From IMG/VR virus record IMGVR_UViG_3300042387_000948, positions 62,001-126,000 of that record: a stretch of DNA of 64,000 nucleotides; one strand, 5' to 3'. Both the position numbers and the translations under genes were made by a program. Each line of letters opens with the position of its first letter. Within the stretch, counting starts at the first letter, position 1. Below the pieces are notes generated by a model. That model saw only the letters and a list, made by a program, of their open reading frames with translations. It was not told the origin of the DNA and did no database searches. Shown piece by piece: positions 8,704 to 58,258 of this stretch.

Positions 8704-8795
8704 TGGTAGAGAGTACCGGATTCGAACCGGTGGACAGGTTTAACCCCATCGGCAGTTTAGCAAACTACTGGTATCAGCCACTCACCCAACTCTCT
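8704..8795 (-). tRNA. tRNA-Ser(GCT)
   Basis: Cloverleaf, long variable arm, encoded CCA. Confidence 0.9.
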
Positions 8796-8804
8796 ATAAA
8801 TATA

Positions 8805-8978
8805 TGGCTGTAGTGGGAGGATTCGAACCATCCACAATGCGATTCAGTTAGTAACATCCGCCGGCCGGCTTGGTGGTCTACCCCATATTACTAACCTATT
8901 TCGTACTCATCACCCCCGAGACAGGAGGGCTTGTCTGCCAAATTAACACACGTGCTAATCATTTTCCAACACACTACA
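8805..8978 (-). ncRNA. Giant tRNA-Asp(GTC)-like RNA with D-loop and variable-arm insertions
   Basis: 7-bp acceptor TGTAGTG/CACTACA plus GCCA, TTCGAAT T-loop, CCCTC-CTGTCTC-GGGGG anticodon arm, ~80 nt structured variable insert. Confidence 0.7.
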
Positions 8979-8985
8979 ATTTTAA

Positions 8986-9074
8986 TGGAAGAGGGAGTAG
9001 GATTCGAACCCACGGACCTGTTACAGTCTCTTGATTTCAAGTCAAGTGCGATAGACCAACTCTGCCATCCCTCC
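8986..9074 (-). tRNA. tRNA-Ser(TGA)
   Basis: Cloverleaf, long variable arm, CCA. Confidence 0.9.
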
Positions 9075-9079
9075 TTATT

Positions 9080-9646
9080 TTACTCTTTTTCTGCTTTTCT
9101 TTCTTCTACTACTTCTAAATATGCCTGATACAAAGAATCCTTATGCTCCATTAATTCATCAATTACACCCTGTCTATAATCTTCAGCTTCTTCATCATCT
9201 TCACTCCAATATTTATCCAAATCCAATTTAATATCCAAATCTTCCATATCATCGTAACCAAATCCAAATACAAATGCTCCCATAGGGTCTAAACATTCAT
9301 CTTCGTATGTACCATATAGAACTACATCTTTATTAATACCACATAATATATATGTCAACTTTTCTAAAAATTGAGTTGGTACACTCCAAGCTGATGTCAT
9401 GTAGATTTGGACTTCGGATTCAAAGTCTTCAGTAACGGCTGATTCTACTTCCAACCACTTTGCACCAATGTTATCATACCACCAATCTAACTTGCTGAAA
9501 TCCACATCTCCATACATTTGTTTGATGATGTGTTCAACATTGGTATAGTACTCATTAGTACCATCGTTAAAGATTTCTTTTAATTTGTCATACGATGGTT
9601 GGTCCAAATTCCCAATCGTAAGTGAGGTACTCATATGATTTGCCAT
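9080..9646 (-). CDS. Hypothetical protein (YubB/DUF1281 ferredoxin-like-domain type) inside tRNA array
   Basis: WWYDNIGAKW and TSAWSVP motifs. Confidence 0.65.
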   Translation of the reverse strand: MANHMSTSLTIGNLDQPSYDKLKEIFNDGTNEYYTNVEHIIKQMYGDVDFSKLDWWYDNIGAKWLEVESAVTEDFESEVQIYMTSAWSVPTQFLEKLTYILCGINKDVVLYGTYEDECLDPMGAFVFGFGYDDMEDLDIKLDLDKYWSEDDEEAEDYRQGVIDELMEHKDSLYQAYLEVVEERKAEKE

Positions 9647-9661
9647 AACTTATATTTTGTT

Positions 9662-9745
9662 TGGTGGGAGTAGAAGGACTCGAACCTCCGAACTCGTAGA
9701 GAAGTGATTTACAGTCACCCGCAATTGCCACTATGCGATACTCCC
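9662..9745 (-). tRNA. tRNA-Tyr(GTA)
   Basis: Cloverleaf, variable arm, CCA. Confidence 0.92.
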
Positions 9746-9749
9746 AAAT

Positions 9750-9857
9750 GTGTGGGTAGGAGTCTCATCCCACACTAGACTTAAGGTTTCGAGTTCTTTT
9801 ACAACTTACTCTGAAAGTTATTCGCCCGCGTGTCCTTCACCTTAAAGCGGGAGCTCC
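9750..9857 (-). ncRNA. Putative structured RNA (nested hairpin)
   Basis: GGAG/CTCC, TTAAGGT/ACCTTAA and ATAACTT/AAGTTGT nested stems. Confidence 0.45.
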
Positions 9858-9860
9858 TTA

Positions 9861-9935
9861 TGGAGCAGGTAGTCAGATTCGAACTGACGTCTCCGGTTTG
9901 GAAGACCAGAGCACTAACCACTGTGCTATACCTGC
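9861..9935 (-). tRNA. tRNA-Gly(TCC)
   Basis: Cloverleaf, U73, CCA. Confidence 0.92.
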
Positions 9936-9940
9936 AAATT

Positions 9941-10153
9941 TCCCCACATTGAGATTCCATGTGAGTAGTTATTTATAGTTTTTCCTTTCAAAAACCCAAT
10001 GCATCTTACTGCTTAAAAAGTCAACACTACTGGGAGGAGATGTGTCGTTCTCCTTTATTCCCACGACACCGGCGTTTAAGGATGTCCGGTCCAATACCCT
10101 ATCCATTGTTAAATGAGTCTTGGATTAAAGACTACCGAGCATCTCTTACTCGT
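9941..10153 (-). ncRNA. Putative ~210 nt multi-stem RNA with pseudoknot
   Basis: GAGTA/TACTC closure, AGTCTT/AAGACT, TGTCGT/ACGACA whose loop GGGA..GGAGA pairs with TCTCCTCCC. Confidence 0.55.
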
Positions 10154-10155
10154 TG

Positions 10156-10229
10156 TGGACCAGGTAGGAATCGAACCTACTACCTTTTGATTATGAGTCA
10201 ACTGCTCTAACCGAGTGAGCTACAAGTCC
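10156..10229 (-). tRNA. tRNA-CAT (Ile2 lysidine-type or elongator Met)
   Basis: Cloverleaf, CTCATAA loop. Confidence 0.85.
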
Positions 10230-10281
10230 ATATCGTTTAATCTAACGATAAAATCTGATATCGTTTCTTTCAACGATAATA

Positions 10282-10393
10282 TGGGTACCGGAGGAGAGAT
10301 TGGTTACTCTCACGCAGTCCTTTTCGGTTACTGCACCACTTCGAATCAGGCACGTCTAATGGTTGTACTTCCCATTCTTTCCGCCACTCCGGC
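10282..10393 (-). ncRNA. Aberrant tRNA-Leu-like RNA
   Basis: Acceptor GCCGGAG/CTCCGGT, hairpin in D-loop, long variable arm, non-canonical T-loop TAACCAAT, weak anticodon stem. Confidence 0.6.
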
Positions 10394-10403
10394 ATATAAT
10401 TTT

Positions 10404-10479
10404 TGGTGGAGGATAACGGATTCGAACCGTTGTCTCCGCCGTGCAAGGGCGGTGCTAAAACCAGCTCAGCTAATCCCCC
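10404..10479 (-). tRNA. tRNA-Ala(TGC)
   Basis: Cloverleaf, G3:U70, CCA. Confidence 0.93.
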
Positions 10480-10481
10480 AA

Positions 10482-10650
10482 ACCGAAACCGCTATTTTCA
10501 TAACGGCTTCTTTTCTCCTTCTCCACTTACCTCTTTCGAGTGGAAGGCAAGATTGTAATGTAACGGCTGTGCGGTTTGTGTCCGAGATTGCTCTCCAGTT
10601 TCCATTTCATTCTTAGCGTCCGTTCCGCCATTCTTTCGAATCGTTACATT
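10482..10650 (-). ncRNA. Putative structured RNA rich in GNRA-capped hairpins
   Basis: AATGTAACG/CGTTACATT closure; ATTC-GAAA-GAAT, GAGA-GCAA-TCTC, CTC-GAAA-GAG, GCCGTTAT-GAAA-ATAGCGGT. Confidence 0.6.
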
Positions 10651-10651
10651 G

Positions 10652-10734
10652 TACTTCGGACTGGAATCGAACCAGCACTCCATAAAGAAACAGCATTTTA
10701 AGTGCTGCGGGTCTACCGATTCCCCCACCGAAGC
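10652..10734 (-). tRNA. tRNA-Leu(TAA)
   Basis: Cloverleaf with variable arm. Confidence 0.9.
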
Positions 10735-10743
10735 GAACTGAAC

Positions 10744-11097
10744 CTACACTTTTGTAAGTTTGGCTTTCTTAAACTTTGTGTGTTTCTGCTTACCACTAAT
10801 AAGAATATCCACACGTTTTGTGAACCTAGCATTCATTACATCTCTTACTACATAAACTCCATTGTGTTTACCGATGCCTGTAATTCGTACTTTAGTTCCA
10901 AATTTGTACTTTCTCTTCAAATCTCTACTAACTGCCACAATTCGGGTTGTTCCTTTCTTAATTCGAAACCCACTTGCCGTTAATCGAGGTGTACTATCTG
11001 TCTGCGATGTTGTTGCAGAATAAGTTGTCACTGTTACTATATCCGTTGCGTTTACTCCGAAACTCAAAAGGATACATACTATGGTCTTTTTTATCAT
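10744..11097 (-). CDS. 3D (Asp-Asp-Asp) domain protein, secreted
   Basis: Signal peptide; TYS..QTD..TASG, VAVSRD, FGTKV, VRD, RVDI. Confidence 0.8.
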   Translation of the reverse strand: MIKKTIVCILLSFGVNATDIVTVTTYSATTSQTDSTPRLTASGFRIKKGTTRIVAVSRDLKRKYKFGTKVRITGIGKHNGVYVVRDVMNARFTKRVDILISGKQKHTKFKKAKLTKV

Positions 11098-11111
11098 ATA
11101 GTTTTATTTAG

Positions 11112-11185
11112 TGACTCCGTTTGGGTTCGAACCAAAGACCTATTCTTTAGAAGAGAATTGCTCTATCCAGCTGAGCTACGGAGCC
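11112..11185 (-). tRNA. tRNA-Arg(TCT)
   Basis: Cloverleaf. Confidence 0.92.
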
Positions 11186-11220
11186 GTTATTTATTCCTAC
11201 TTATAAATCTTTTATATAAC

Positions 11221-11586
11221 TTAAATCTTCATAGAGTCATCATCTTTACTTTCGGATGGTTTCTCTAATTTCAATTCAATTGGCGGATACTTTTTGATAA
11301 TCTCTAACGAATCTTCTGCTGCCCATTTCTCTTTTAATTGAGCACGTTTTTCGATGGTTTTGATATCAGCTTTAAGTTTATCAATTCTATCATTGATTTT
11401 CTTAATCTTTACCCATCTGGTTGCGTAATCTGATGTTGTTACTGTCTCCCATTCAATATCCCTTTGAAGGACTTTGATTTCTTTCTTAATTGTTTCAATT
11501 GCTCCTCTATCGTTTGATAATTGAGGGTCTACACCACCCAACAAACTATTGAAGAACATTGTAATTGATAATACGATTTCTTTCAT
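11221..11586 (-). CDS. Hypothetical coiled-coil protein
   Basis: ORF downstream of promoter 11604-11635. Confidence 0.65.
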   Translation of the reverse strand: MKEIVLSITMFFNSLLGGVDPQLSNDRGAIETIKKEIKVLQRDIEWETVTTSDYATRWVKIKKINDRIDKLKADIKTIEKRAQLKEKWAAEDSLEIIKKYPPIELKLEKPSESKDDDSMKI

Positions 11587-11653
11587 AACTTATTTTGTTT
11601 TTACAAAGATACGCAAAAGTTTTCACATATCCTAATTTTATTTTTACTTTTTG

Positions 11654-11724
11654 ATGCCTTACTAGGATTCGAACCTAGACTAACTCCGCCAAAAGGAGTT
11701 GCGCTACCCTTACGCTATAAGGCA
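11654..11724 (-). tRNA. tRNA-Gln(TTG)
   Basis: Cloverleaf, U1-A72. Confidence 0.9.
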
Positions 11725-11729
11725 ATTCG

Positions 11730-11803
11730 CAGTTCGTACGGGATTCGAACCCGTGGTCTCTTCCGTGACAGGGAAGCATGTTGGGCCTCTACACCAACGA
11801 ACT
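11730..11803 (-). tRNA. tRNA-Asp(GTC)
   Basis: Cloverleaf, G73. Confidence 0.92.
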
Positions 11804-11809
11804 AAAATA

Positions 11810-11992
11810 AAACAAACTTTTTGTGTCCTTCTACACATCATAACCAACTTTCATTGGCGGTTACATTTCGCATTGGGTTAATTACTCCCCACTTATAGTA
11901 ACTCTCTCCTGACCTGTATGACTATTCCGGCTTCAACAGGACCCATTTGGATTTTATATACCGAGGGGTTACACCACAGTCGTTGTTTGTTT
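11810..11992 (-). ncRNA. Putative ~180 nt structured RNA
   Basis: AAACAAAC/GTTTGTTT closure, TGGGT/ACCCA, CCTGT/ACAGG, GTTACT/AGTAAT, CCAAT-GAAA-GTTGG. Confidence 0.55.
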
Positions 11993-11994
11993 TG

Positions 11995-12067
11995 AGCTTT
12001 TGATAGGACTCGAACCTACAACCTGCTGATTACAAATCAGCTGCACTACCAATTGTGCTACAAAAGC
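11995..12067 (-). tRNA. tRNA-Thr(TGT)
   Basis: Cloverleaf. Confidence 0.92.
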
Positions 12068-12071
12068 AATT

Positions 12072-12121
12072 TGTTCGTCTTTCCGAGCTGTCATCGGTTG
12101 ATTATATACAACACCACCGAA
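12072..12121 (-). ncRNA. Small RNA motif (Flavo-1-like)
   Basis: CGGTGG..hairpin..CCGATGACAGCTCGGAAAGACGAAC; resemblance recalled, not searched. Confidence 0.45.
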
Positions 12122-12125
12122 AGTG

Positions 12126-12197
12126 TACTCCCAACGGGAATCGAACCCGTGACTCATCCGTGAAAGGGACGTGACTTAACCGCTTGTCGATAGGAGC
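12126..12197 (-). tRNA. tRNA-Glu(TTC)
   Basis: Cloverleaf. Confidence 0.92.
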
Positions 12198-12202
12198 AGA
12201 TG

Positions 12203-12332
12203 TGCGGATGGGAGGATTCGAACCTCCAGTTACCTCTTCATTGTAACTAATTACAATGGCCAGCCTTTATTTTTGTTATCTCCTTACGTTATGGAGTTCC
12301 CACATTACCATATACTTTAGCTGGTCACCCGC
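12203..12332 (-). ncRNA. tRNA-like RNA with giant D-arm and no anticodon loop
   Basis: Acceptor GCGGGTG/CATCCGC, perfect T-arm GGAGG-TTCGAAT-CCTCC, CCAGC/GCTGG stem enclosing ~55 nt, CATTGTAA-TTAG-TTACAATG hairpin. Confidence 0.65.
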
Positions 12333-12353
12333 TTTTTAATAATTATCAATATT

Positions 12354-12362
12354 TCAAAGAAC
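12354..12362 (-). promoter_or_regulatory. boxA-like antitermination site (GTTCTTTGA)
   Basis: Immediately downstream of promoter 12367-12398; identical at 13875 and 15301. Confidence 0.65.
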
Positions 12363-12417
12363 ACTACAAAAATACGAAACTTTTTTCATATTTCCAAACA
12401 ATTCTTACTATTTAATT

Positions 12418-12492
12418 TGGGGTGTAAGGGCGGTATCGAACCGACTTCCCTGGCTCCACAAACCAGTACATCACCTTAATGCTTCAAACACC
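12418..12492 (-). tRNA. tRNA-His(GTG)
   Basis: Cloverleaf with G-1:C73, CCA. Confidence 0.88.
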
Positions 12493-12499
12493 ATTTTAA

Positions 12500-12778
12500 T
12501 TAGAAGCGGGATTCCGCCGCCCAATCTTCATTTACTAAATACCAATATTCTTCTCTTAAATAAATAATATCGTAACTACCATTACTATCAATCGAAACTA
12601 TATTTTTCTTAACCAACGAACCCAATGCCCCACGAAGAACTTTGGTAGAGATTCCCAATTCTGAACTCAAATCATTTACATCCACATCAGAGAAACCTGG
12701 TTCAGCATACAAACCACCAATAAAGGTAGTAAGGGTTTTGGTTTCCAATTCAGTCAAATTCAATTCGTTAATCATCAT
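12500..12778 (-). CDS. Winged helix-turn-helix protein
   Basis: DVNDLSSELGISTKVLRGALGSLVKKNIV HTH pattern; class II promoter upstream. Confidence 0.65.
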   Translation of the reverse strand: MMINELNLTELETKTLTTFIGGLYAEPGFSDVDVNDLSSELGISTKVLRGALGSLVKKNIVSIDSNGSYDIIYLREEYWYLVNEDWAAESRF

Positions 12779-12899
12779 ATCTTTAGGTGGAGGGAGGGGA
12801 GTTTGTCTCTCAACCACGTATTAAAGGTACGCAATTTTAATGAAATAAACAAGCCTTTTGTAAAATATTTTTAAATTATTTTTAAATTATTTTTAAAGT

Positions 12900-12967
12900 T
12901 GCGTGTACGAGGTTCGAACTCATTTGGCTTTCCTTATGAGAGATAGCTCTTTTCCACTAAGCCACGC
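12900..12967 (-). pseudogene. Degenerate tRNA-CAT-like sequence
   Basis: CTCATAA loop and TTCGAAC T-loop but only ~5-bp acceptor and weak stems. Confidence 0.5.
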
Positions 12968-12973
12968 AATGAT

Positions 12974-13048
12974 TGGTGTGATTGAAGGGAATCGAACCCT
13001 TATTGAATGCACCACAAACATTTGTCCTACCATTAGACGACAATCACC
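12974..13048 (-). tRNA. tRNA-His(GTG), second copy (A73)
   Basis: Cloverleaf, CCA. Confidence 0.82.
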
Positions 13049-13049
13049 G

Positions 13050-13120
13050 AGGCGAGTACAGGATTCGAACCTGTGTAAGAGCTTTTGCAGAGCTCCATAT
13101 AACCACTCTAACAACTCGCC
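13050..13120 (-). tRNA. tRNA-Cys(GCA)
   Basis: Cloverleaf, U73. Confidence 0.88.
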
Positions 13121-13125
13121 TTATG

Positions 13126-13197
13126 TAGTTCCGGAGAGAATCGAACTCCCATCAATTGGTTCGTAGCCAATCATTTTATCCGTTAAACTACGGAACT
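13126..13197 (-). tRNA. tRNA-Arg(ACG)
   Basis: Cloverleaf. Confidence 0.9.
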
Positions 13198-13203
13198 ATT
13201 TTG

Positions 13204-13274
13204 CACACCCACTAGGATTCGAACCCAGAACAACGCTTTTGGAGAGCGGCATGATACCATTTCACTATGGATGC
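13204..13274 (-). tRNA. tRNA-Trp(CCA)
   Basis: Cloverleaf. Confidence 0.85.
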
Positions 13275-13295
13275 GGATAATACTAAATCGTATTG

Positions 13296-13373
13296 TTGGC
13301 AAGAGGGGATTCGAACCCATATTTTCAACCAATTACCTTACTCCAACTTATCAGATTGGGTGGATACTTGCCA
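13296..13373 (-). ncRNA. D-armless tRNA-Ile(GAT)-like RNA
   Basis: Acceptor TGGCAAG/CTTGCCA, CCAAT-CTGATAA-GTTGG anticodon arm, TTCGAAT T-loop, 7-nt connector instead of D-arm, 22-nt variable region. Confidence 0.7.
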
Positions 13374-13382
13374 ATGTTAATG

Positions 13383-13460
13383 TGGTAGGGTAAGAGGGAT
13401 TTGAACCCCCATGATGTCTACAACCCAAATGTAGCGGCTTACCAGTTAGCCCATTACCCT
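13383..13460 (-). tRNA. tRNA-Pro(TGG)
   Basis: Cloverleaf, CCA. Confidence 0.87.
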
Positions 13461-13466
13461 ATATTG

Positions 13467-13540
13467 TTCCCCCGGCGTGATTCGAACACGCGACCCCCTA
13501 TTTAAAAGATAGGTGCATCTACCAGCTGAGCTACGAGAGA
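13467..13540 (-). tRNA. tRNA-Lys(TTT)
   Basis: Cloverleaf. Confidence 0.87.
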
Positions 13541-13589
13541 ATTTGTTTGTCATACTTGTCACTTTCCATAGTATAAATTGTTTAATTGT

Positions 13590-13666
13590 TGGTGGAGCAG
13601 ACAGGTATCGAACCTGTTCCTCTGGATTTTCAGTCCAGCGCAATGAACCTCATCTGCCACTACTCC
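13590..13666 (-). tRNA. tRNA-Phe(GAA)
   Basis: Cloverleaf, CCA. Confidence 0.9.
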
Positions 13667-13704
13667 CTATTCCGATTTTGATATGTAGCATCGGGAACTA
13701 CCTG

Positions 13705-13778
13705 TGTCCATAGTAGGACTCGAACCTACACAAACTGGTTTCTAAGACCAGTGCGGTTGCCAATTACGCCATACGGAC
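13705..13778 (-). tRNA. tRNA-Leu(TAG), short variable loop
   Basis: Cloverleaf, CTTAGAA loop, 5-nt variable loop. Confidence 0.85.
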
Positions 13779-13786
13779 ATTTAATG

Positions 13787-13859
13787 TAGTGAGTGAGGGA
13801 CTCGAACCCCCAACATCCGCCATGTAAAGACGGCGCTCTACCAATTGAGCTAACCCACT
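13787..13859 (-). tRNA. tRNA-Val(TAC)
   Basis: Cloverleaf. Confidence 0.92.
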
Positions 13860-13874
13860 ATTTTTACCACGATG

Positions 13875-13883
13875 TCAAAGAAC
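13875..13883 (-). promoter_or_regulatory. boxA-like antitermination site (GTTCTTTGA)
   Basis: Follows the first tRNA downstream of the attenuator. Confidence 0.65.
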
Positions 13884-13889
13884 TCTATT

Positions 13890-13962
13890 GAGGGGAGGGA
13901 GAATTACGATATCTCGACCTGATGATTAACAGTCATCTGCTCTGCCTCTGAGCTACCACCCC
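13890..13962 (-). tRNA. tRNA-Asn(GTT), atypical T-loop ATCGTAA
   Basis: Cloverleaf. Confidence 0.85.
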
Positions 13963-13969
13963 TTAAAAC

Positions 13970-14007
13970 AAAAAAACCCCTAACCGATTTTGATTTCAGT
14001 TAGGGGT
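13970..14007 (-). terminator. Intrinsic terminator of candidate attenuator
   Basis: ACCCCTAACTGA-loop-TCGGTTAGGGGT followed by T-run, ending 7 nt before tRNA-Asn. Confidence 0.85.
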
Positions 14008-14032
14008 CTTTTAACCTTTATATGTAGTTTGG

Positions 14033-14167
14033 TTATTCCACTTCTACATTTTGTACCCCTAACGTTATTTCAATTCTCTTCGAATTAAAATCACACACAC
14101 CAATCCCAGCCCACAACATATTCGTTGCCGGTTGATAATTGGGTGTATGTAGGTTAAGAGTTTTCAT
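14033..14167 (-). CDS. Candidate attenuator leader peptide (44 aa, all 20 amino acids)
   Basis: MKTLNLHTPNYQPATNMLWAGIGVCDFNSKRIEITLGVQNVEVE; overlaps antiterminator arm 14055-14063. Confidence 0.75.
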   Translation of the reverse strand: MKTLNLHTPNYQPATNMLWAGIGVCDFNSKRIEITLGVQNVEVE

Positions 14168-14180
14168 TCTATTTCTTTTA

Positions 14181-14189
14181 TATAAGTAT
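14181..14189 (-). promoter_or_regulatory. Putative phage late-type promoter motif ATAYTTATA
   Basis: Same motif upstream of genes at 16189, 25201, 34447, 35596, 36110, 42087, 43911, 46400, 63058. Confidence 0.6.
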
Positions 14190-14299
14190 GTATTATTTAA
14201 TTTTTCAGTTTTTCCACATCTTTTAGTGTTATGGGAGACCGAAATCTCCCACTCCACAGTGTAATAAAAATCAAGATATGAAAACAACTCACGTTGTAG

Positions 14300-14370
14300 A
14301 GCGGTGGGATGGAATTGAACCATCTCCTTCGACCTGGACGGCCGATGTGCTACCGTAACACTTCCTCCGC
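14300..14370 (-). tRNA. Aberrant tRNA-Gly(TCC)-like (G33)
   Basis: GCG acceptor plus U73, loop CGTCCAG, A:A mismatch at 5:68. Confidence 0.7.
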
Positions 14371-14375
14371 TTGTG

Positions 14376-14445
14376 AGCGGAACTAAGGAATCGAACCCCA
14401 ACTTCTCTACGGATGTAGAGCGTGCTACCTTTACACTAATACCGC
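14376..14445 (-). tRNA. Aberrant tRNA-Gly(TCC)-like (6-nt loop)
   Basis: GCG acceptor plus U73, loop CATCCG, U:U mismatch at 5:68. Confidence 0.65.
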
Positions 14446-15707: not shown

Positions 15708-16166
15708 TTACTTCTTTCCTATTTTGTAAGATAAACCCAGTCCTAATGTGAAATCACTACCTACTAAGTTACCAATTGTCCACAAATTAAGTGTGCTTCC
15801 TGGTCTTAATGGGTTGTACATTAAAAATGCATTCGGTTTGTTTCCACCTGCAGTTGGTTGAACACCAAATCCTACAATTGCTTTATCTTCTTTCAATTGT
15901 CTTAACACACCAAACTTCATATTGGAAGAGATTGTTCCAGTAGCAGTATTAACTCCCGGAGGAAGTACAATTCCGCTTGAGTTTTGGTCTTTAATTTCAG
16001 TATAAGGAAGTCCAGCGAAGAAACCCCATCCTTTTTTCATGTATCCACCGGTAATATAACCATCCGATGGTCCACCTTTTCTAGTTCCGGTTAAGAACCA
16101 TTCTTGTGCGTTTGAAACGATACTCATTCCGAATAACATTACAAACAATAACATTAACTTTTTCAT
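15708..16166 (-). CDS. Secreted/outer-membrane beta-barrel-like protein
   Basis: Signal peptide ending SNA-Q; C-terminal LGLGLSYKI beta-signal-like. Confidence 0.6.
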   Translation of the reverse strand: MKKLMLLFVMLFGMSIVSNAQEWFLTGTRKGGPSDGYITGGYMKKGWGFFAGLPYTEIKDQNSSGIVLPPGVNTATGTISSNMKFGVLRQLKEDKAIVGFGVQPTAGGNKPNAFLMYNPLRPGSTLNLWTIGNLVGSDFTLGLGLSYKIGKK

Positions 16167-16212
16167 AATTGTTTTTTAGTTTACTTAATATAAATATATA
16201 CTAATTTTTTTT

Positions 16213-16434
16213 TCATAACCCATATACTGGTTTGATAGATTCTTCTCTATTTAAAGTGATGTTTCTATCCATTCGTATATCTTTATTACTTAGAGTCCAG
16301 ATTTCTCCATCATCCATTCCGCAAGTAAAGTATAAATCGTGCTCCTGAGAGTAATCTATACACATAAATGCAAATCCTTTCATTCCGTCCTTTACCCTAA
16401 CTATGGGTATGGTTGGATTCAATTGTATTATCAT
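16213..16434 (-). CDS. Hypothetical protein
   Basis: MIIQLNPTIP...DYSQEHDL phage-type motif; start trimmed. Confidence 0.65.
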   Translation of the reverse strand: MIIQLNPTIPIVRVKDGMKGFAFMCIDYSQEHDLYFTCGMDDGEIWTLSNKDIRMDRNITLNREESIKPVYGL

Positions 16435-17068
16435 TCTTTTGTATTTTAGGGAACAATATTTGCTCCATAAAGTAACGTGCTCTTTCTTCACCTATCTTTG
16501 CTTTCAATGCTCCAAAGGTTCTAGGGTTTGATGCTTGAACTTCACAATAACGATTTTGGATATCAATAACTTTATTAATATCACTCGCCTCTTCTTTTAA
16601 ATATAACCCATCCTTCAAAAACGTTTTGTACTTTTCTAATGACCAACTGCAAAACCTCATAAACTCACTATCAGATTCAGGTTTAATCATAATAAATTTA
16701 TCCGAAAAAACAGTTGCCCATTGAGGTAGTGGTTTTCTCCCATTAAAATCTATATCCTCATCAAAGTTATACTCCTTAATGCCAGGTGATAAGTCCATAT
16801 AAACACCAGTTACACCCGATTTAGTAGTTATGACATCAAAACCATATATGGGTTCTGGTGATGTTGGATTTGGGAATGTGGTAACGTGTAGTACCTCAAT
16901 TGCCCTATCACCATATCTTTCAACGTGTGCCATTCTATACACATCAGATTCAAAACGATGATTCACCCACCCAAAATCTTCAGTAGGTAATACTTTACAA
17001 CCCGGTGCGTGTTTCATTATAGAAAGAAACCTATCGGCTAACTCATCCAAATATTCGGTGTAGTTCAT
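16397..17068 (-). CDS. pcyA: Ferredoxin-dependent bilin reductase, PcyA/PcyX family
   Basis: RMAHVE, LHVTTFP, PIYGFDV, DLSP, LPQWATVFS, QNRYC..Q..NPRT, FMEQILFP. Confidence 0.85.
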   Translation of the reverse strand: MNYTEYLDELADRFLSIMKHAPGCKVLPTEDFGWVNHRFESDVYRMAHVERYGDRAIEVLHVTTFPNPTSPEPIYGFDVITTKSGVTGVYMDLSPGIKEYNFDEDIDFNGRKPLPQWATVFSDKFIMIKPESDSEFMRFCSWSLEKYKTFLKDGLYLKEEASDINKVIDIQNRYCEVQASNPRTFGALKAKIGEERARYFMEQILFPKIQKNDNTIESNHTHS

Positions 17069-17555
17069 CTAATATCTTTATGTTGTAATCCAATGCTTTG
17101 TTTGCTTCATCAGCCCACTCATCTTTTTGGATTGCTCTAATACTTCCAGCTGCCTCTCTCATATCCTCAAACTCATACATTCTACCACTACCCGGCGTTT
17201 TCTCTTTCATCATCTGTCCACCAAACATAATAGCTAGGTAGTTAAGATATATGTGTGGTTGTTGTTCTTCTGCCGTTAATGTGTTTAGGTAATCACAATA
17301 TTCAGCAGTACTTAATAATAATGGAATTGTATCCTCACCTACCAATTCAATAATATCTGCTTCAACTAAATCCTTTCTATTCAAAGATGGATGCGGTAGT
17401 GGATTCTTTTCTAATGTGTAGAAAATTGCGTCTTGTTGTGTTAAGTAGTTTGCATACTCTTCGTTATTTAACTCACCTCTAAACATCTTTTGATTGAATG
17501 GCATTTTTTCTGCCAATGAATGTTTTTCTGCTATTGCTTCTTTTAATGGTAACAT
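17043..17555 (-). CDS. Heme oxygenase (biliverdin-producing)
   Basis: LKEAIAEKHSLAE (proximal His), HIYLNYLAIMFGGQ. Confidence 0.85.
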   Translation of the reverse strand: MLPLKEAIAEKHSLAEKMPFNQKMFRGELNNEEYANYLTQQDAIFYTLEKNPLPHPSLNRKDLVEADIIELVGEDTIPLLLSTAEYCDYLNTLTAEEQQPHIYLNYLAIMFGGQMMKEKTPGSGRMYEFEDMREAAGSIRAIQKDEWADEANKALDYNIKILDELHRIFG

Positions 17556-17557
17556 AT

Positions 17558-17800
17558 TTATATTGTTTTAGTTATTTTAATCATTATACCAGCACGTCCG
17601 GCTGATATGTGGTACTTATTCTCTCTATTATCATTTATCCAACCATAACTTTTAAATCGATATAGTATTACCTCTTTGTTTTCAAACCACGCGTGGATAC
17701 AATTGGTTGCGTAATCGATGTGGGGGTCTCTAATAAATCCCAACTTCCAACTTTCAACAAATTCCGATTCTAATTCATCGGTATCAATTGTAATTACCAT
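17558..17800 (-). CDS. Hypothetical protein
   Basis: ORF packing. Confidence 0.65.
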   Translation of the reverse strand: MVITIDTDELESEFVESWKLGFIRDPHIDYATNCIHAWFENKEVILYRFKSYGWINDNRENKYHISAGRAGIMIKITKTI

Positions 17801-18303
17801 AATTCATCGTCAACTACACTCATTGTAACAGGCATCTTTGCCGTTGCTTTGGATAGAAATCTTTTTTTGTTTGGGTTTATAGGTTGTCCCAACGAACCAC
17901 TCAAATGCGAAAACGAGTGGGATGGTGCAGTATTAACTACTTTAGTAATCCCCACCCCCATCTTTTTTGCGTTTTGTATTGCTTCCAATAAATTAAAATA
18001 TGAATCTATAAGAGGTAATCCTAATATAGTATTCCTAATTGTTTCAATAAAAATTGGTATGCTACTTATATCTTTTTTAGTTATAATTTCAGTACTTTGG
18101 TTTTTATTATGTACATCTTCAACATACATTTTCCAAACTTTAGTACTTATAACAATTCTAAATAGGGGTGTATGGTCAAACTTATCACATAGATGAAATT
18201 GAAATGTTGTATCATCCTGTTTGATAACATCTCCAAAATTCATCTCAACCCCAAACATCACTACCCTCTCACCAACAATATGATTTACATTGGTAATATT
18301 CAT
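17794..18303 (-). CDS. Hypothetical protein
   Basis: ORF packing. Confidence 0.65.
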   Translation of the reverse strand: MNITNVNHIVGERVVMFGVEMNFGDVIKQDDTTFQFHLCDKFDHTPLFRIVISTKVWKMYVEDVHNKNQSTEIITKKDISSIPIFIETIRNTILGLPLIDSYFNLLEAIQNAKKMGVGITKVVNTAPSHSFSHLSGSLGQPINPNKKRFLSKATAKMPVTMSVVDDELW

Positions 18304-20037: not shown

Positions 20038-20261
20038 CGAATAGCCAGAACATCAGTCTTACTAATGCTGCTACTAATATAAATATAGAAATTCCAAAAG
20101 TTATTAACACATAAATACATATAACTTTTATTCCTCATCCAAAAAATCTTCACCTTTATAATCAGGATGATTTTTTTTCATATGCTCAATACCCGCCATC
20201 CATAATATACTAACGGGAAATACCATTAAAAATACACATAAAATTACTGTTATCGTTTCCA

Positions 20262-22611: not shown

Positions 22612-23196
22612 TTATATGTTTGCTAATACCCAATGCATAAATTTTCTATGTCCCTGTCCCCATAAGTGAATTCCATCGCCAGAATCACTTCTATTAATTG
22701 TATCCGTCATAGGAACAATTGTAGCTCCCTTTATATCAGTTACGATTCTCTTTTGTAAATCAATGTATCGATTACGGCATTTTGTTTCAACATCGTTTGG
22801 ATATGATGTTTGTGTTATGACCATTTGTGGATTGTATCCAACTACCACAATAGGTTCTGCTCCCATATACTTTGCCATATTTACCATCTGTTGGATGTTT
22901 TCTATCGTTTCATCTTCTCTAACGCTTGAGAATGAATCATTGATACCACCATAGATGATTACCTTTGTGTATCTATCCGTTTTGTGGGAATATTGTTTCA
23001 GTTGTGATAGCATCCATTTAGTACGTTTTCCACCTTTTGAAATGTTATCGTATTTCATCTGCAACATTCTACCTAATTGATGTTGCCAACCACCACTATA
23101 TGCGGTTAGAGAATCACCAACAAATAGGATTCTCTCTTCTCTTTGTATAAACCCCATAAGGAATACACATAATAGTACTATAAGAATTACTTTCAT
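22612..23196 (-). CDS. SGNH/GDSL hydrolase, secreted
   Basis: GDSLT, GGIND, DGIH. Confidence 0.85.
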   Translation of the reverse strand: MKVILIVLLCVFLMGFIQREERILFVGDSLTAYSGGWQHQLGRMLQMKYDNISKGGKRTKWMLSQLKQYSHKTDRYTKVIIYGGINDSFSSVREDETIENIQQMVNMAKYMGAEPIVVVGYNPQMVITQTSYPNDVETKCRNRYIDLQKRIVTDIKGATIVPMTDTINRSDSGDGIHLWGQGHRKFMHWVLANI

Positions 23197-23930: not shown

Positions 23931-24137
23931 TTACCTACCACCAATCCAATCATCCCAACTCTTTTTTGAGACAAATTCCCCATTTCTATCCACATTAACG
24001 GAAATTAACTTAACCATATACACAAATGGCCAAAGAACAAACCAACATATTAGAGATACTACAACCGATATCGATAGGATTAGAACCAACATTCCAACTA
24101 CCACTTTAATCAATAACCATTTGAATAACTTTTTCAT
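23931..24137 (-). CDS. Small membrane protein
   Basis: Long hydrophobic segment. Confidence 0.55.
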   Translation of the reverse strand: MKKLFKWLLIKVVVGMLVLILSISVVVSLICWFVLWPFVYMVKLISVNVDRNGEFVSKKSWDDWIGGR

Positions 24138-24784
24138 CCTTCGTAATTTTTTTGGGCTTTATCCCAATCCAAGCACTCAAAAAATGAATCTATCCACCCG
24201 CTCCTATTACTCTTATGTTTTAGGTAATACGAATGTTCCCACAAATCGCATCCTATGATTGGTATGTATTGGTTATTAGGAAACATTAAAGGATTGTCTT
24301 GATTTTGGGTTGTTATTATGGATAACTCTCCTCCATTATCCTTCACTAACCAAACCCAACCTGAACCAAATCTTTTTAGACCTTCCTCTCTAAACTTCTC
24401 TATAAAGGATTCCATACTTCCCCATTTTTTACCAATAGAAAGAGATAGATTTCCTTTGGGTGTGGTTTTATTAGGAGTCAATAACCTAAAGAAGAAATTG
24501 TGATTCCATATCCCACCCCCATTATTGCGGATTCCACTCTCATACGAACGGATATCACCTAATACTTCCTCCAGAGACCTTTGAGAAGCCGGTGTTCCAT
24601 CGATTAGAGAATTGTAGGTTTCCACATACTTCTTCAGATGCTTTGTGTGATGTTCCCTCATTGTCTCCTCATCGATGATGGGTTCTAAGGCATTATACTC
24701 GTAAGGTAGTGGTATTAAGTGTTGAGCGGAATTCTTTCCGTGTATCTCAACTAAATCCTTAAAACTCATCATTCCGCTTTCCAT
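24134..24784 (-). CDS. sod: Fe/Mn superoxide dismutase
   Basis: LPYEYNALEP, HHTKH, NNGGGIWNH, FGSGWVWL, NQD, DLWEHSYY. Confidence 0.93.
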   Translation of the reverse strand: MESGMMSFKDLVEIHGKNSAQHLIPLPYEYNALEPIIDEETMREHHTKHLKKYVETYNSLIDGTPASQRSLEEVLGDIRSYESGIRNNGGGIWNHNFFFRLLTPNKTTPKGNLSLSIGKKWGSMESFIEKFREEGLKRFGSGWVWLVKDNGGELSIITTQNQDNPLMFPNNQYIPIIGCDLWEHSYYLKHKSNRSGWIDSFFECLDWDKAQKNYEG

Positions 24785-27143: not shown

Positions 27144-27809
27144 TTAACTTAAATTGTTTTTAGTGATAGCGTGCATAAACTCTTCTCTAACTAAGTTGTT
27201 CTTTTCTAAGAATGCTCCGCTGAATTTATTTGTTGTCATCATTGAATCTGGATGTTGGATACCTCTCATACCACAACATAAGTGATGCCCACTAATTGAA
27301 ACTGCCACATCATCGCACTCTAACTTATCAGTTACGAATTTGTGGATTTGTGCAGTAAGTGATTCCTGCATTTGAGGTCTACGAGAGAACCAATCTACGA
27401 TACGATTTAATTTAGATAGTCCAATCACCTTACTCTTTGGAATATAAGCAATTGCTGCGTATCCGTAAAATGGTAGGTTGTGATGTGCACACATTGAGTT
27501 TACCTTAATGCCTGTTTGGATTACAATACCATCGTAACTATCCTCATTTGGGAATGTGGTAATACAGGGTGCTTCACTCATACTACCTCTAACCAAGTCA
27601 TCAACCCAAGCCTTTGCTACCCGCTTTGGAGTATCAATCGTTTGTGGGTCTTTGGTGTAATCAAAACCCAATGCCTTTAGAAACTCACCATAGTAATGGG
27701 ATGCGTTAAACAACATCGTTTCCTTTTCTTCGGGAGTTACTATCTGATTTTCGTTTGCTTTACTTAACATTCTCATATGCTTTTGGTGATGGTAAACCAC
27801 TGTACTCAC
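27144..27809 (-). CDS. folE: GTP cyclohydrolase I
   Basis: TPKRVAK, SMCAHH, GLSKLNR, RPQMQE, HLCCGMRG; true start may be ~27770. Confidence 0.92.
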   Translation of the reverse strand: MSTVVYHHQKHMRMLSKANENQIVTPEEKETMLFNASHYYGEFLKALGFDYTKDPQTIDTPKRVAKAWVDDLVRGSMSEAPCITTFPNEDSYDGIVIQTGIKVNSMCAHHNLPFYGYAAIAYIPKSKVIGLSKLNRIVDWFSRRPQMQESLTAQIHKFVTDKLECDDVAVSISGHHLCCGMRGIQHPDSMMTTNKFSGAFLEKNNLVREEFMHAITKNNLS

Positions 27810-46372: not shown

Positions 46373-46414
46373 TGTACGAATTTTACCTAATTTTATAGAT
46401 ATAAATATAAAAAT

Positions 46415-47308: not shown

Positions 47309-47309
47309 T

Positions 47310-49291: not shown

Positions 49292-49292
49292 A

Positions 49293-49697: not shown

Positions 49698-49698
49698 A

Positions 49699-52570: not shown

Positions 52571-52581
52571 AATTGTTGTTT

Positions 52582-54226: not shown

Positions 54227-54227
54227 A

Positions 54228-54929: not shown

Positions 54930-54940
54930 AATTTATTTTG

Positions 54941-58257: not shown

Positions 58258-58258
58258 A

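What the first reader, a model, noticed from the sequence alone, without database searches (positions are those of the whole stretch)
16397..17555. Heme oxygenase plus PcyA-type bilin reductase in an apparently Bacteroidota phage
Seen: overlapping genes for a heme oxygenase and a ferredoxin-dependent bilin reductase. The reductase keeps residues matching PcyA His74/Glu76 (AHVE), His88 (LHVTT) and Asp105 (GFDV), with the His-to-Asp spacing of 17. Known: ho1/pcyA/pebS occur in cyanophages and hemO/pcyX in other marine phage sequences. Here the promoters and marker genes point to a non-phototrophic Bacteroidota host and no photosynthesis genes are in the window. Inference: a phycocyanobilin-like product made for an unknown purpose (phytochrome chromophore switching, antioxidant, or iron release).
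Basis: partly seen in the sequence, partly recalled or inferred. Interest (0 to 1): 0.7.

Follow-up and report, generated by a model that had tools for sequence, protein, structure and literature searches.

The report
Lake phage heme-to-bilin gene pair
A large lake-water phage, probably infecting non-photosynthetic Bacteroidota, carries two overlapping genes that should turn host heme into a phycocyanobilin-type pigment; such cassettes are already known from other phages of non-phototrophs, so this is a new lineage of a known kind.

Summary
Window 17043-17555(-) encodes a compact heme oxygenase (170 aa). [quoted passage not shown] The two genes overlap by 26 nt.

The FDBR keeps the PcyA catalytic triad (Glu50, His61, Asp78 = PcyA Glu76, His88, Asp105). 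It lacks both PcyX-specific residues.

In trees it falls in a well-supported, unnamed metagenomic lineage of the non-cyanobacterial "AX" group. This lineage is separate from marine PcyX, Bradyrhizobium-type PcyA, the Crystal Bog phage CB_2 PcyA and cyanobacterial PcyA.

The HO-then-FDBR overlapping pair is conserved in 54 of 56 related loci and is under purifying selection. Natural FDBR-HO fusions also exist.

The carrier is a 207-kb T4-like lake myophage with no psbA, CpeT, ferredoxin, AlaS or bilin-binding genes.

Bacteroidota-type promoters, no Shine-Dalgarno signal and Bacteroidota-like host-derived genes point to a Bacteroidota host. That host is not proven: the nearest cultured relative is labelled a Microcystis phage.

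Most likely function: host heme to biliverdin to phycocyanobilin, for a purpose other than light harvesting, probably heme or iron management.

This is a new member of a known kind, of moderate interest.

The parts
17043..17555 (-). Heme oxygenase (170 aa), a compact HO-1/HmuO-type enzyme. His12 is the proximal heme ligand and Gly112-Gly113 form the distal-helix kink. The canonical distal Gly-Asp is replaced by Ala108-Ile109.
   Evidence: Pfam PF01126 1.5e-12. Alignment to HmuO. 14 invariant residues in 39 homologues. AF2 pLDDT 95.6, TM 0.83-0.86 to HO-1/HmuO/Synechocystis HO-1. dN/dS 0.18-0.26.
16397..17068 (-). Ferredoxin-dependent bilin reductase (223 aa), PcyA-type. Residues His48, Glu50, His61 and Asp78 correspond to PcyA His74, Glu76, His88 and Asp105.
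   Evidence: Pfam PF05996 1.6e-18 and PHROG 7278. PDB sequence hits: PcyX 69 bits, PcyA 55 bits. AF2 pLDDT 93.9, TM 0.80-0.82 to PcyA. Trees. Residue census. dN/dS 0.10-0.17.
17043..17068 (-). 26-nt overlap between the end of HO and the start of the FDBR, suggesting translational coupling.
   Evidence: Read directly from the sequence. The same HO-then-FDBR overlap is found in 54 of 56 related loci.
20078..20087 (-). Nearest upstream promoter-like motif, TATATTTATA (class B). It lies in the only sizeable intergenic gap (224 nt) ahead of a 9-gene string that includes HO and the FDBR. The same motif precedes the sheath and other structural genes.
   Evidence: Inference only; there are no transcript data for HO or the FDBR.
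17558..18303 (-). Two small ORFs of unknown function (169 aa at 17794-18303; 80 aa at 17558-17800), packed directly upstream of HO in the same string.
   Evidence: No Pfam or PHROG hit. Conserved only in the closest relatives (L014: 31% and 62% identity). Not CpeT-like.
16213..16434 (-). 73-aa ORF overlapping the 3' end of the FDBR by 38 nt; function unknown.
   Evidence: 92% identical in relative L014. Not conserved downstream of the FDBR in more distant relatives.
15708..16166 (-). Signal-peptide-bearing protein resembling an outer-membrane beta-barrel, with its own class-B promoter motif at 16189-16198. Listed as context and host marker, not as part of the cassette.
   Evidence: The nearest cellular Atlas clusters are Bacteroidota OMP beta-barrel proteins. 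The only stretch of this region seen in a lake metatranscriptome is a 226-nt contig here.
24134..24784 (-). Fe/Mn superoxide dismutase, 7 kb upstream. Listed as context: an iron- or manganese-dependent oxidative-stress enzyme and a host-affinity marker.
   Evidence: Pfam Sod_Fe_N and Sod_Fe_C. The nearest named Atlas clusters are Bacteroidota.

Best explanation
This is a two-gene, translationally coupled heme-to-bilin auxiliary metabolic cassette in a large T4-like myophage from lake water.

Steps, with their basis:
- Step 1 (inferred from fold and conserved residues): the compact heme oxygenase binds host heme through His12. Using O2 and host reductant, it opens the ring to biliverdin IX-alpha, releasing Fe2+ and CO.
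- Step 2 (inferred from the intact Glu/His/Asp triad and from published biochemistry on relatives): the FDBR takes four electrons from a host ferredoxin, since neither this phage nor 50 relatives encode one. It reduces biliverdin in the PcyA manner, D-ring vinyl first via Glu50 and then the A ring, giving phycocyanobilin.
- The enzyme belongs to a distinct, abundant, so far unnamed lineage of the non-cyanobacterial AX group.
- The host is most likely a freshwater Bacteroidota bacterium, which has no phycobiliproteins. The pigment is therefore not for light harvesting.
- The most likely role (inference) is breakdown of host heme to free iron for phage-period iron enzymes. The reductase would pull the reaction by removing biliverdin. 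A signalling or antioxidant role for the bilin is the alternative.
For: Identity and fold.

Catalytic triad: Glu is present at the PcyA-Glu76 position in 47 of 48 clade members. The PcyX clade has Asp, Ser or Asn there. Val, not the PcyX Met, occupies the PcyA-Ile86 position in 47 of 47. PMC13446030 states that PCB synthesis strictly depends on Glu76/His88/Asp105. PMC11480375 shows that the CB_2 phage FDBR lacking the PcyX Asp makes PCB and that its short vHemO is active.

Tree: the own clade plus near relatives has 96/95 support and is separate from PcyX (100/99), Bradyrhizobium-like PcyA (100/99), CB_2-like (98/95) and cyanobacterial PcyA (100/100).

Functional coupling: HO lies directly upstream of and overlapping the FDBR in 54 of 56 loci. 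FDBR-HO fusion proteins exist. dN/dS is 0.10-0.26.

No light-harvesting context: psbA, CpeT, phycobilisome/BBAG, GAF, Fer2 and AlaS are absent from the record. In 50 related viral records, psbA is 0/50, Fer2 0/50 and AlaS 0/50.

Host:
- The two-box motif TTG-N17-22-TAnnTTT[GA] occurs 22 times against 2.2±1.5 expected. TAnnTTTG occurs 21 times against 7.5±2.6.
- SD-like motifs occur at 6%, against 12% in a control window. Flavobacterium phage immuto shows the same pattern (2% vs 7%), unlike Microcystis phage Ma-LMM01 (32% vs 16%).
- SOD and OMP-like kin are Bacteroidota.
- A homologue is annotated in a Bacteroidota MAG.
- bS21 is present in 17 of 50 relatives, as in published Bacteroidetes-infecting lake phages (PMC9723584).

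Environment: the sequence is found in 18 or more lake-water metagenome runs.
Against: - No biochemical data exist for this lineage, and FDBR regiospecificity can flip with single substitutions (PMC13446030).
- By sequence score, the best solved relative is PcyX (69 bits against 55 for PcyA).
- The HO lacks the canonical distal Gly-Asp (Ala108-Ile109), so its activity or regiospecificity is not assured.
- The host is not demonstrated. The nearest cultured phage is labelled Microcystis phage Mel-JY01 (DNA polymerase 50.7% identical), and it shows the same promoter-motif enrichment.
- CpeT, a phycobiliprotein-lyase family, occurs in 5 of 50 relatives and sits next to the cassette in one 217-kb contig.
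- The record has no detectable terminase, portal or capsid gene, so it is probably incomplete.
- No transcript evidence exists for the two genes.
- The physiological role is inference only.
Confidence: 0.55

Rival explanations
1. The reductase works like PcyX or another non-PcyA FDBR. It would reduce biliverdin to phycoerythrobilin via 15,16-dihydrobiliverdin, or stop at a two-electron product or phytochromobilin, despite carrying the PcyA triad.
For: - The best solved sequence relative is PcyX_EBK42635.
- The gene order and overlap with hemO are those of the marine hemO-pcyX cassette.
- Pro occupies the PcyA-Asp220 position, as in PcyX.
- The lineage sits in the same AX supergroup as PcyX.
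- Small changes are known to flip FDBR products (PMC13446030).
Against: - Glu, not Asp, occupies the decisive position in 47 of 48 clade members.
- Val, not the PcyX Met, occupies the Ile86 position.
- The Asp220 position varies even among cyanobacterial PcyA.
- The Glu-bearing CB_2 and Bradyrhizobium enzymes of the same supergroup make PCB (PMC11480375).
Confidence: 0.25
2. The host is a freshwater cyanobacterium. The cassette would then keep phycocyanobilin supplied to phycobilisomes during infection, as proposed for cyanophage pcyA and ho1.
For: - The nearest cultured phage is recorded as Microcystis phage Mel-JY01 (DNA polymerase 50.7%, sheath 48%).
- CpeT is adjacent to HO-FDBR in relative L011 and present in 5 of 50 relatives.
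- PCB is the cyanobacterial chromophore.
- Lakes hold low-GC cyanobacteria.
Against: - Only 38 of 292 ORFs are shared with Mel-JY01, at a mean 42% identity.
- psbA is absent from the record and from 50 of 50 relatives. No ferredoxin, phycobilisome-family (PF00502) or NblA gene was seen.
- There is no SD signal at all, unlike Ma-LMM01 and Mel-JY01.
- Promoter boxes are of the Bacteroidota type.
- SOD and OMP kin are Bacteroidota.
- The CpeT-bearing relatives L029 and L059 also lack an SD signal and carry bS21.
- The FDBR is not in the cyanobacterial/cyanophage PcyA clade.
Confidence: 0.17
3. The enzymes are as in the main explanation, but the selected product is the bilin itself rather than the iron. 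It could be a chromophore that re-tunes or starves a host bacteriophytochrome or another bilin sensor. It could be a ligand for phage CpeT-like carriers present in some relatives. Or it could be a radical scavenger acting alongside the phage SOD.
For: - The FDBR is kept together with HO in 54 of 56 loci and even fused to it. This argues that the reduced bilin matters, not just heme cleavage.
- CpeT-family genes occur in some relatives.
- SOD lies 7 kb away.
- CB_2 PcyA product assembled a functional phytochrome in vitro (PMC11480375).
Against: - No GAF, phytochrome, globin/BBAG or CpeT gene is in this record.
- No host genome is available to check for a bilin sensor.
- An FDBR could also be retained simply to relieve product inhibition of HO.
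Confidence: 0.2
4. The two ORFs are decaying or non-functional remnants of a cassette acquired from another phage.
For: The HO is short (170 aa) and lacks the distal Gly-Asp. The C-terminal 15 residues of the FDBR are modelled with low confidence.
Against: - Both frames are intact.
- dN/dS is 0.10-0.26.
- 14 residues are invariant in HO and 9 in the FDBR, including all catalytic positions.
- HOs of 169-190 aa are the norm across the clade.
- Both models are compact and confident.
- Near-identical copies occur in 18 or more lake samples.
Confidence: 0.03

Closest known systems
vHemO + vPcyA of the freshwater Crystal Bog phage CB_2 (Nat Commun 2024, PMC11480375)
   Same: - It is a freshwater phage of a predicted non-phototroph.
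- It has a short active HO plus an AX-group FDBR that keeps Glu at the Glu76 position and makes PCB.
- The purpose is unknown.
   Different: - It is a separate FDBR lineage. CB_2-like representatives P0129 and P0138 are about 35% identical and form their own 98/95 clade.
- The CB_2 cassette is 'broken' and accompanied by AlaS. Here HO and the FDBR overlap, and AlaS is absent from this record and from 50 of 50 relatives.
- The predicted host of CB_2 is Methylocystis, not Bacteroidota.
Marine hemO-pcyX cassette (PcyX_EBK42635, PDB 5OWG; pelagiphage Mosig MT647606)
   Same: - The gene order is the same, HO then FDBR, with overlapping ORFs in a T4-like myophage of a heterotroph.
- Mosig is the only cultured phage with homologues of both genes (32% identity for each).
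- PcyX_EBK42635 (PDB 5OWG) is the best PDB sequence hit.
   Different: - PcyX has Asp (Asp55) and Met (Met67) where this enzyme has Glu50 and Val59, and PcyX makes PEB (PMC11480375).
- It is a separate clade (100/99).
- The Mosig HO keeps the distal GDLSGG motif, and Mosig also encodes a 2Fe-2S ferredoxin.
Cyanobacterial and cyanophage PcyA (Synechocystis 2D1E; P-SSM4 pcyA)
   Same: The catalytic triad Glu76/His88/Asp105 is shared, and so is the fold (TM 0.80-0.82).
   Different: - Identity is 22-27%.
- It lies on the other side of the deepest split in the tree (100/100).
- Cyanophage pcyA is not fused or overlapped with an HO and sits in genomes with psbA and ferredoxin.
Bradyrhizobium sp. 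ORS278 hemO-pcyA-alaS island (alphaproteobacterial PcyA, AX clade)
   Same: It is a non-cyanobacterial PcyA with the full triad, next to an HO.
   Different: - It is cellular rather than viral.
- It forms a distinct clade (fragments map to P0179 and P0187).
- It is linked to a phytochrome gene and AlaS (PMC11480375), neither of which is present here.
bS21-encoding freshwater myophages predicted to infect Bacteroidetes (ISME Commun 2022, PMC9723584)
   Same: These are large lake myophages. 17 of 50 viral records carrying this FDBR lineage also encode bS21.
   Different: This record has no bS21. That paper does not mention heme or bilin genes.

Membership tests
Ferredoxin-dependent bilin reductase (PF05996) | Profile match above the curated cut-off | tested here: met
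   67.7 bits against a cut-off of 31. PHROG 7278 at 2.4e-23.
Ferredoxin-dependent bilin reductase (PF05996) | Alpha/beta/alpha sandwich fold of solved FDBRs | tested here: met
   AF2 pLDDT 93.9. Foldseek TM 0.80-0.82 to PcyA; PcyX, PebA, PebB, HY2 and PebS are also hit.
PcyA (phycocyanobilin:ferredoxin oxidoreductase) | Catalytic triad Glu76/His88/Asp105 | tested here: met
   Glu50, His61 and Asp78 align to these positions. They are conserved in 47 of 48 clade members.
PcyA (phycocyanobilin:ferredoxin oxidoreductase) | [quoted passage not shown] | not testable with these tools
   This needs a recombinant enzyme assay.
PcyA (phycocyanobilin:ferredoxin oxidoreductase) | Placement in the cyanobacterial/plastid PcyA clade | tested here: not met
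   It lies in the non-cyanobacterial AX-like supergroup, split from cyanobacterial PcyA at 100/100. That supergroup also holds bona fide PCB-making PcyAs (Bradyrhizobium, CB_2).
PcyX (phage PEB synthase) | Asp at the PcyA-Glu76 position (PcyX Asp55) | tested here: not met
   Glu50 here. The PcyX clade has Asp, Ser or Asn.
PcyX (phage PEB synthase) | Placement in the PcyX clade with Mosig and EBK42635 | tested here: not met
   The PcyX clade (100/99) excludes it. Met at the Ile86 position is also absent.
PcyX (phage PEB synthase) | Two-gene cassette with hemO immediately upstream | tested here: met
   26-nt overlap here; found in 54 of 56 related loci.
pre-PcyA (Pre-1/2/3) | Lack of Glu76 and His88 equivalents | tested here: not met
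   Both residues are present, so it is not a pre-PcyA.
Canonical heme oxygenase (PF01126; HO-1/HmuO type) | Profile match and all-helical HO fold | tested here: met
   48.2 bits against a cut-off of 23. pLDDT 95.6, TM 0.83-0.86 to HO-1, HmuO and Synechocystis HO-1.
Canonical heme oxygenase (PF01126; HO-1/HmuO type) | Proximal His ligand and distal-helix Gly-Gly kink | tested here: met
   His12 aligns to HmuO His20. Gly112-Gly113 are invariant in 39 homologues.
Canonical heme oxygenase (PF01126; HO-1/HmuO type) | Distal Gly139-Asp140 (human HO-1 numbering) for oxygen activation | tested here: not met
   Ala108-Ile109 here. Asp is absent across the clade, while the Mosig HO keeps GDLSGG. The consequence for activity is unknown.
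Phage of Bacteroidota | Bacteroidota-type -33/-7 promoter boxes and absence of Shine-Dalgarno use | tested here: met
   The two-box motif occurs 22 times against 2.2±1.5 expected. SD-like motifs occur at 6% against a 12% control, matching Flavobacterium phage immuto. However, Mel-JY01, recorded as a Microcystis phage, shares the promoter enrichment.
Phage of Bacteroidota | Direct host link (CRISPR spacer, prophage, isolation) | not tested
   Two scans of genome contigs found nothing. Relatives cannot be drawn for a virus record.

The most novel reading that the evidence does not exclude
A large, so far undescribed lineage of PcyA-type reductases, paired with minimal heme oxygenases that lack the canonical distal Asp, is spread through big freshwater phages of Bacteroidota, many of which also carry bS21. 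These hosts have no phycobiliproteins. Under this reading the phages make phycocyanobilin for a new, non-photosynthetic purpose. In some relatives the bilin would be handed to phage-encoded CpeT-like bilin-binding proteins. That would open bilin biology in heterotrophic infected cells and extend the reach of PCB synthesis to a new host phylum.
Probability: 0.3. Interest if true: 0.75.

Novelty: new member of a known kind. Interest (0 to 1): 0.5.

Why it matters
Phage hemO-FDBR cassettes in hosts that have no phycobilisomes are an open puzzle. They are known from SAR11 phages and from a phage of methanotrophs, and nobody knows what the bilin is for.

This locus adds a third host group (inferred rather than proven) and a distinct, abundant lake lineage:
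- 249 protein clusters at 90% identity.
- 51 IMG/VR contigs.
- Near-identical copies in 18 or more lake samples.

The lineage keeps the PCB-type active site. It was probably missed by the AlaS-baited survey of 2024, because none of these phages carries AlaS.

If the host is confirmed, cultivable Flavobacteria-type hosts could make the function of these cassettes experimentally tractable. The HO variant without the distal Asp is also a small enzymological question in its own right.

Tried and rejected
- **Cellular relatives.** Two scans of 185,579 species genomes, with the FDBR alignment and with the phage SOD, found nothing. No donor or host lineage could be read from cellular genomes. The genome search cannot draw relatives for a virus record.
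- **Names of homologues.** Cluster look-ups gave almost only 'hypothetical protein' or 'phycocyanobilin:ferredoxin oxidoreductase'. One informative entry was a partial PcyA in a Bacteroidota MAG. The SOD homologue search returned only unnamed metagenomic sequences.
- **CpeT-like neighbour in this phage.** Rejected. The 169-aa and 80-aa upstream ORFs have no similarity to the CpeT of relative L011 and no Pfam hit. PF06206 is absent from the record.
- **HO-FDBR physical complex.** The predictor gave 'no answer' (score 0.00). This is not evidence either way.
- **Transcription.** One lake metatranscriptome holds only a 226-nt contig in the neighbouring OMP-like gene, and nothing on HO or the FDBR.
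- **T9SS sorting domain as a Bacteroidota marker.** One sub-threshold hit (16 bits), inconclusive.
- **Sigma-70 consensus scan of the region.** Fewer matches than in shuffles (25 vs 33.5) and one weak terminator. Uninformative.
- **Asp220 position as a discriminator.** Rejected because it varies within cyanobacterial PcyA.
- **Full-length CB_2 and Bradyrhizobium sequences.** They were seen in a paper supplement but not typed into tools. Only short fragments were used to map them onto clades.
Full report
**Observation**

The window is bases 62001-126000 of a 207,029-bp IMG/VR virus record. Two minus-strand ORFs lie exactly at the stated coordinates:
- 17043-17555, 170 aa, matching Pfam Heme_oxygenase (48.2 bits, cut-off 23).
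- 16397-17068, 223 aa, matching Fe_bilin_red (67.7 bits, cut-off 31) and PHROG 7278.

The genes overlap by 26 nt. HMMER aligns them onto Synechocystis PcyA His74/Glu76 (A-H48-V-E50), His88 (H61) and Asp105 (D78).

**The carrier**

Nearly all genes are on one strand, GC is 34%, and 25 tRNA genes lie 2-8 kb downstream of the cassette. The record has a T4-type family-B DNA polymerase, a ribonucleotide reductase, a tail sheath, a tail tube and tail-fibre proteins. It is therefore a large T4-like myophage.

The closest cultured phage is Microcystis phage Mel-JY01 (DNA polymerase 50.7% identical, sheath 48%). Next come an uncultured 484-kb phage and Flavobacterium phage immuto (sheath 35.5%). Only 38 of 292 ORFs have a Mel-JY01 homologue, at a mean 42% identity.

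The cassette DNA is found nearly unchanged in at least 18 lake-water metagenome runs.

The record has no detectable terminase, portal, protease or capsid gene, although a head-completion gene sits at its very end. It is probably incomplete despite a CheckV estimate of 100%.

**The reductase**

Against solved structures by sequence, the best hit is PcyX_EBK42635 (69 bits), ahead of PcyA (55 bits). An AlphaFold model built on 113 homologues has pLDDT 93.9, and its best fold matches are PcyA structures (TM 0.80-0.82).

The 5.8-billion-protein search found 249 clusters at 55-93% identity, all metagenomic and unnamed. The exhaustive representative search found only 228 clusters at 50% identity across the whole family.

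A careful maximum-likelihood tree of 77 sequences splits cyanobacterial/cyanophage PcyA (100/100) from a non-cyanobacterial supergroup. Within the supergroup the following are separate, well-supported lineages with unresolved order:
- this protein's clade plus close outliers (96/95);
- the PcyX clade containing Mosig (100/99);
- a Bradyrhizobium-like PcyA clade (100/99);
- a CB_2-like clade (98/95);
- a clade containing FDBR-HO fusions (91/94).

The Bradyrhizobium and CB_2 labels rest on short fragments from the supplement of PMC11480375 mapped onto my sequences.

Residue census:
- Glu at the PcyA-Glu76 position is found in 47 of 48 members of the own clade and in every other clade. The exception is PcyX, which has Asp, Ser or Asn.
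- The PcyA-Ile86 position is Val in 47 of 47 members here and Met in PcyX.

Published work bears on this:
- PCB synthesis strictly depends on Glu76/His88/Asp105 (PMC13446030).
- Glu76 is absent in PcyX and pre-PcyA (PMC10151467).
- The CB_2 phage enzyme, which lacks the PcyX Asp55, is a true PcyA that makes PCB (PMC11480375).

The enzyme therefore meets the residue definition of PcyA, fails the definitions of PcyX and pre-PcyA, and belongs to its own lineage.

**The heme oxygenase**

It is short but complete. The model has pLDDT 95.6 and aligns over its whole length with human and rat HO-1, Synechocystis HO-1 and HmuO (TM 0.83-0.86). His12 aligns with the proximal His20 of HmuO. Gly112-Gly113 match the distal-helix glycines, and 14 residues are invariant in 39 homologues.

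The canonical distal Gly-Asp is Ala-Ile here, and Asp is missing across the clade. The Mosig HO keeps GDLSGG. This is a real departure whose effect I cannot test.

**The pair as a unit**

- In 54 of 56 related loci an HO ORF lies directly upstream of and overlapping the FDBR. The two exceptions are cut by contig ends.
- Neighbouring genes are not conserved beyond the closest relatives.
- Natural FDBR-HO fusion proteins of 380-399 aa exist in a sister clade.
- dN/dS against two close relatives is 0.18-0.26 for HO and 0.10-0.17 for the FDBR.
- A complex prediction gave no answer.

**What is not there**

This record has none of the following:
- psbA
- CpeT
- plant-type ferredoxin
- a phycobilisome or BBAG globin
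- a GAF domain
- AlaS
- bS21

Among 50 related viral records carrying this FDBR lineage:

| Gene | Records with it |
|---|---|
| psbA | 0/50 |
| Ferredoxin (Fer2) | 0/50 |
| AlaS | 0/50 |
| CpeT | 5/50 |
| bS21 | 17/50 |

In one 217-kb relative, CpeT sits immediately upstream of HO-FDBR.

**Host**

Upstream regions show three motif classes:
- cG-TATcTTTG-TAAAA, which is the Bacteroidota -7 box TAnnTTTG;
- TATATTTATATG, before the sheath and other structural genes;
- a two-box AAAGCTTGaca-N~20-TACCTTTA.

| Genome | TAnnTTTG, observed vs shuffled | Two-box motif, observed vs shuffled | SD-like at -20..-4 vs control window |
|---|---|---|---|
| This phage | 21 vs 7.5±2.6 | 22 vs 2.2±1.5 | 6% vs 12% |
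| Flavobacterium phage immuto | no enrichment (1 vs 1.1) | 3 vs 0.3 | 2% vs 7% |
| Pooled relatives | 17 vs 5.7 | 11 vs 1.4 | 9% vs 12% |
| Microcystis phage Ma-LMM01 | no enrichment (3 vs 1.9) | 1 vs 0.4 | 32% vs 16% |
| Mel-JY01 | 20 vs 6.1 | 14 vs 1.7 | 24% vs 5% |

Mel-JY01 shares the promoter enrichment, so that signal alone cannot settle the host.

Further leads:
- The phage SOD and the OMP-like neighbour have Bacteroidota clusters as nearest named kin in the ESM Atlas.
- One homologue is annotated as PcyA in a Bacteroidota MAG.
- bS21-bearing lake myophages have been assigned to Bacteroidetes hosts (PMC9723584).

I put a Bacteroidota host at about 0.7 and a cyanobacterial host at about 0.17.

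**Expression**

HO and the FDBR sit in a string of nine ORFs separated by -38 to +15 nt. The string follows a 224-nt gap that carries TATATTTATA at 20078-20087. This is the motif class seen before structural genes, which suggests late co-transcription. That is inference. The one metatranscriptome available shows only a fragment of the neighbouring OMP-like gene.

**Mechanism**

- Shown: both proteins have the fold and the conserved catalytic residues of their families and evolve as a coupled unit.
- Inferred from established enzymology: HO opens host heme to biliverdin IX-alpha, releasing iron and CO. The FDBR takes four electrons from a host ferredoxin and makes PCB in the PcyA order.
- Inferred more weakly: in a host without phycobiliproteins the benefit is heme breakdown and iron release for phage-period iron enzymes (the phage encodes a ribonucleotide reductase and an Fe/Mn SOD). 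The reductase would remove biliverdin. Alternatively, the bilin acts as a signal, a ligand or an antioxidant.

**Comparison and novelty**

The kind is known:
- hemO-pcyX in marine phages and pelagiphage Mosig (same order and overlap, 32% identity);
- hemO plus a PCB-making PcyA in the freshwater phage CB_2, predicted to infect Methylocystis (PMC11480375).

New here:
- a separate and abundant FDBR lineage with the PCB-type active site;
- an HO variant lacking the distal Asp;
- no AlaS or ferredoxin partner;
- a probable Bacteroidota host.

No paper in the library combines heme oxygenase, bilin reductase, phage and Bacteroidota. I file it as a new member of a known kind, with interest 0.5.

Noticed in passing
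G000 whole record; head-completion gene at G000 205687-206838 (outside the window): tblastn with Mel-JY01 and immuto proteins finds no terminase, portal, prohead protease or major capsid gene, while head-completion, sheath, tube and PhoH are found. The 'linear, 100% complete' record probably lacks its head module.
   Followed up: partly
Upstream of ORF starts at window 31922, 29665, 29343, 5294, 4848; outside the window at G000 47582, 46310, 39436, 35150: Genes behind the two-box promoter AAAGCTTGaca-N~20-TACCTTTA carry a conserved AACCCC 6-10 nt before the ATG, where a Shine-Dalgarno would normally sit. It may be a phage-specific leader or translation element.
   Followed up: no
window 8704-14445: An array of 25 tRNA genes on the minus strand covers 19 amino acids (all 20 except Ile). 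It includes one odd ARAGORN call with a two-base anticodon at 14375-14445.
   Followed up: no
L018-L021 (Microcystis phage Mel-JY01, PP395634.1): This phage, recorded as infecting Microcystis, shows the same enrichment of Bacteroidota-type promoter boxes (TAnnTTTG 20 vs 6.1; two-box 14 vs 1.7). It encodes bS21 and a 'Fibrobacter major paralogous domain' protein and has no cyanophage hallmark genes. It does use SD-like motifs (24%). Its host assignment may deserve a second look.
   Followed up: partly
P0139, P0143, P0164, P0177, P0178 (metagenomic proteins); P0132: These are natural single-chain FDBR-HO fusions (380-399 aa, FDBR at the N terminus). P0132 (410 aa) is an FDBR fused to a domain I read, by eye only, as methyltransferase-like.
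   Followed up: partly
L011 8936-10642 (JGI 3300043325, 217-kb contig); G002, G027-G029, G031: A CpeT-family gene lies directly upstream of HO-FDBR in one big relative and elsewhere in five other related viral records. Several of these also lack an SD signal and carry bS21. These may be phage-encoded bilin-binding proteins outside cyanophages.
   Followed up: partly
window 5814-7340, 22612-23196, 24134-24784, 27144-27809, 28153-29343, 32377-32787, about 46000-62400: Other auxiliary genes are present:
- tryptophan halogenase
- GDSL lipase
- Fe/Mn SOD
- GTP cyclohydrolase I
- MoxR/CobS-like AAA ATPase (AAA_5 plus CbbQ_C)
- DUF454
- from about 46 kb, several sugar-modifying genes (a PfkB-family kinase, an NAD-dependent epimerase/dehydratase, a GtrB-like glycosyltransferase) in a 16-kb run of otherwise unscanned ~250-360-aa ORFs
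   Followed up: partly
window 17031-17272: In lake DNA runs the contig depth rises 3- to 7-fold over the 3' part of the HO gene (the conserved distal-helix region), with several variant short contigs. This is a sign of many co-occurring related phages sharing that stretch.
   Followed up: no
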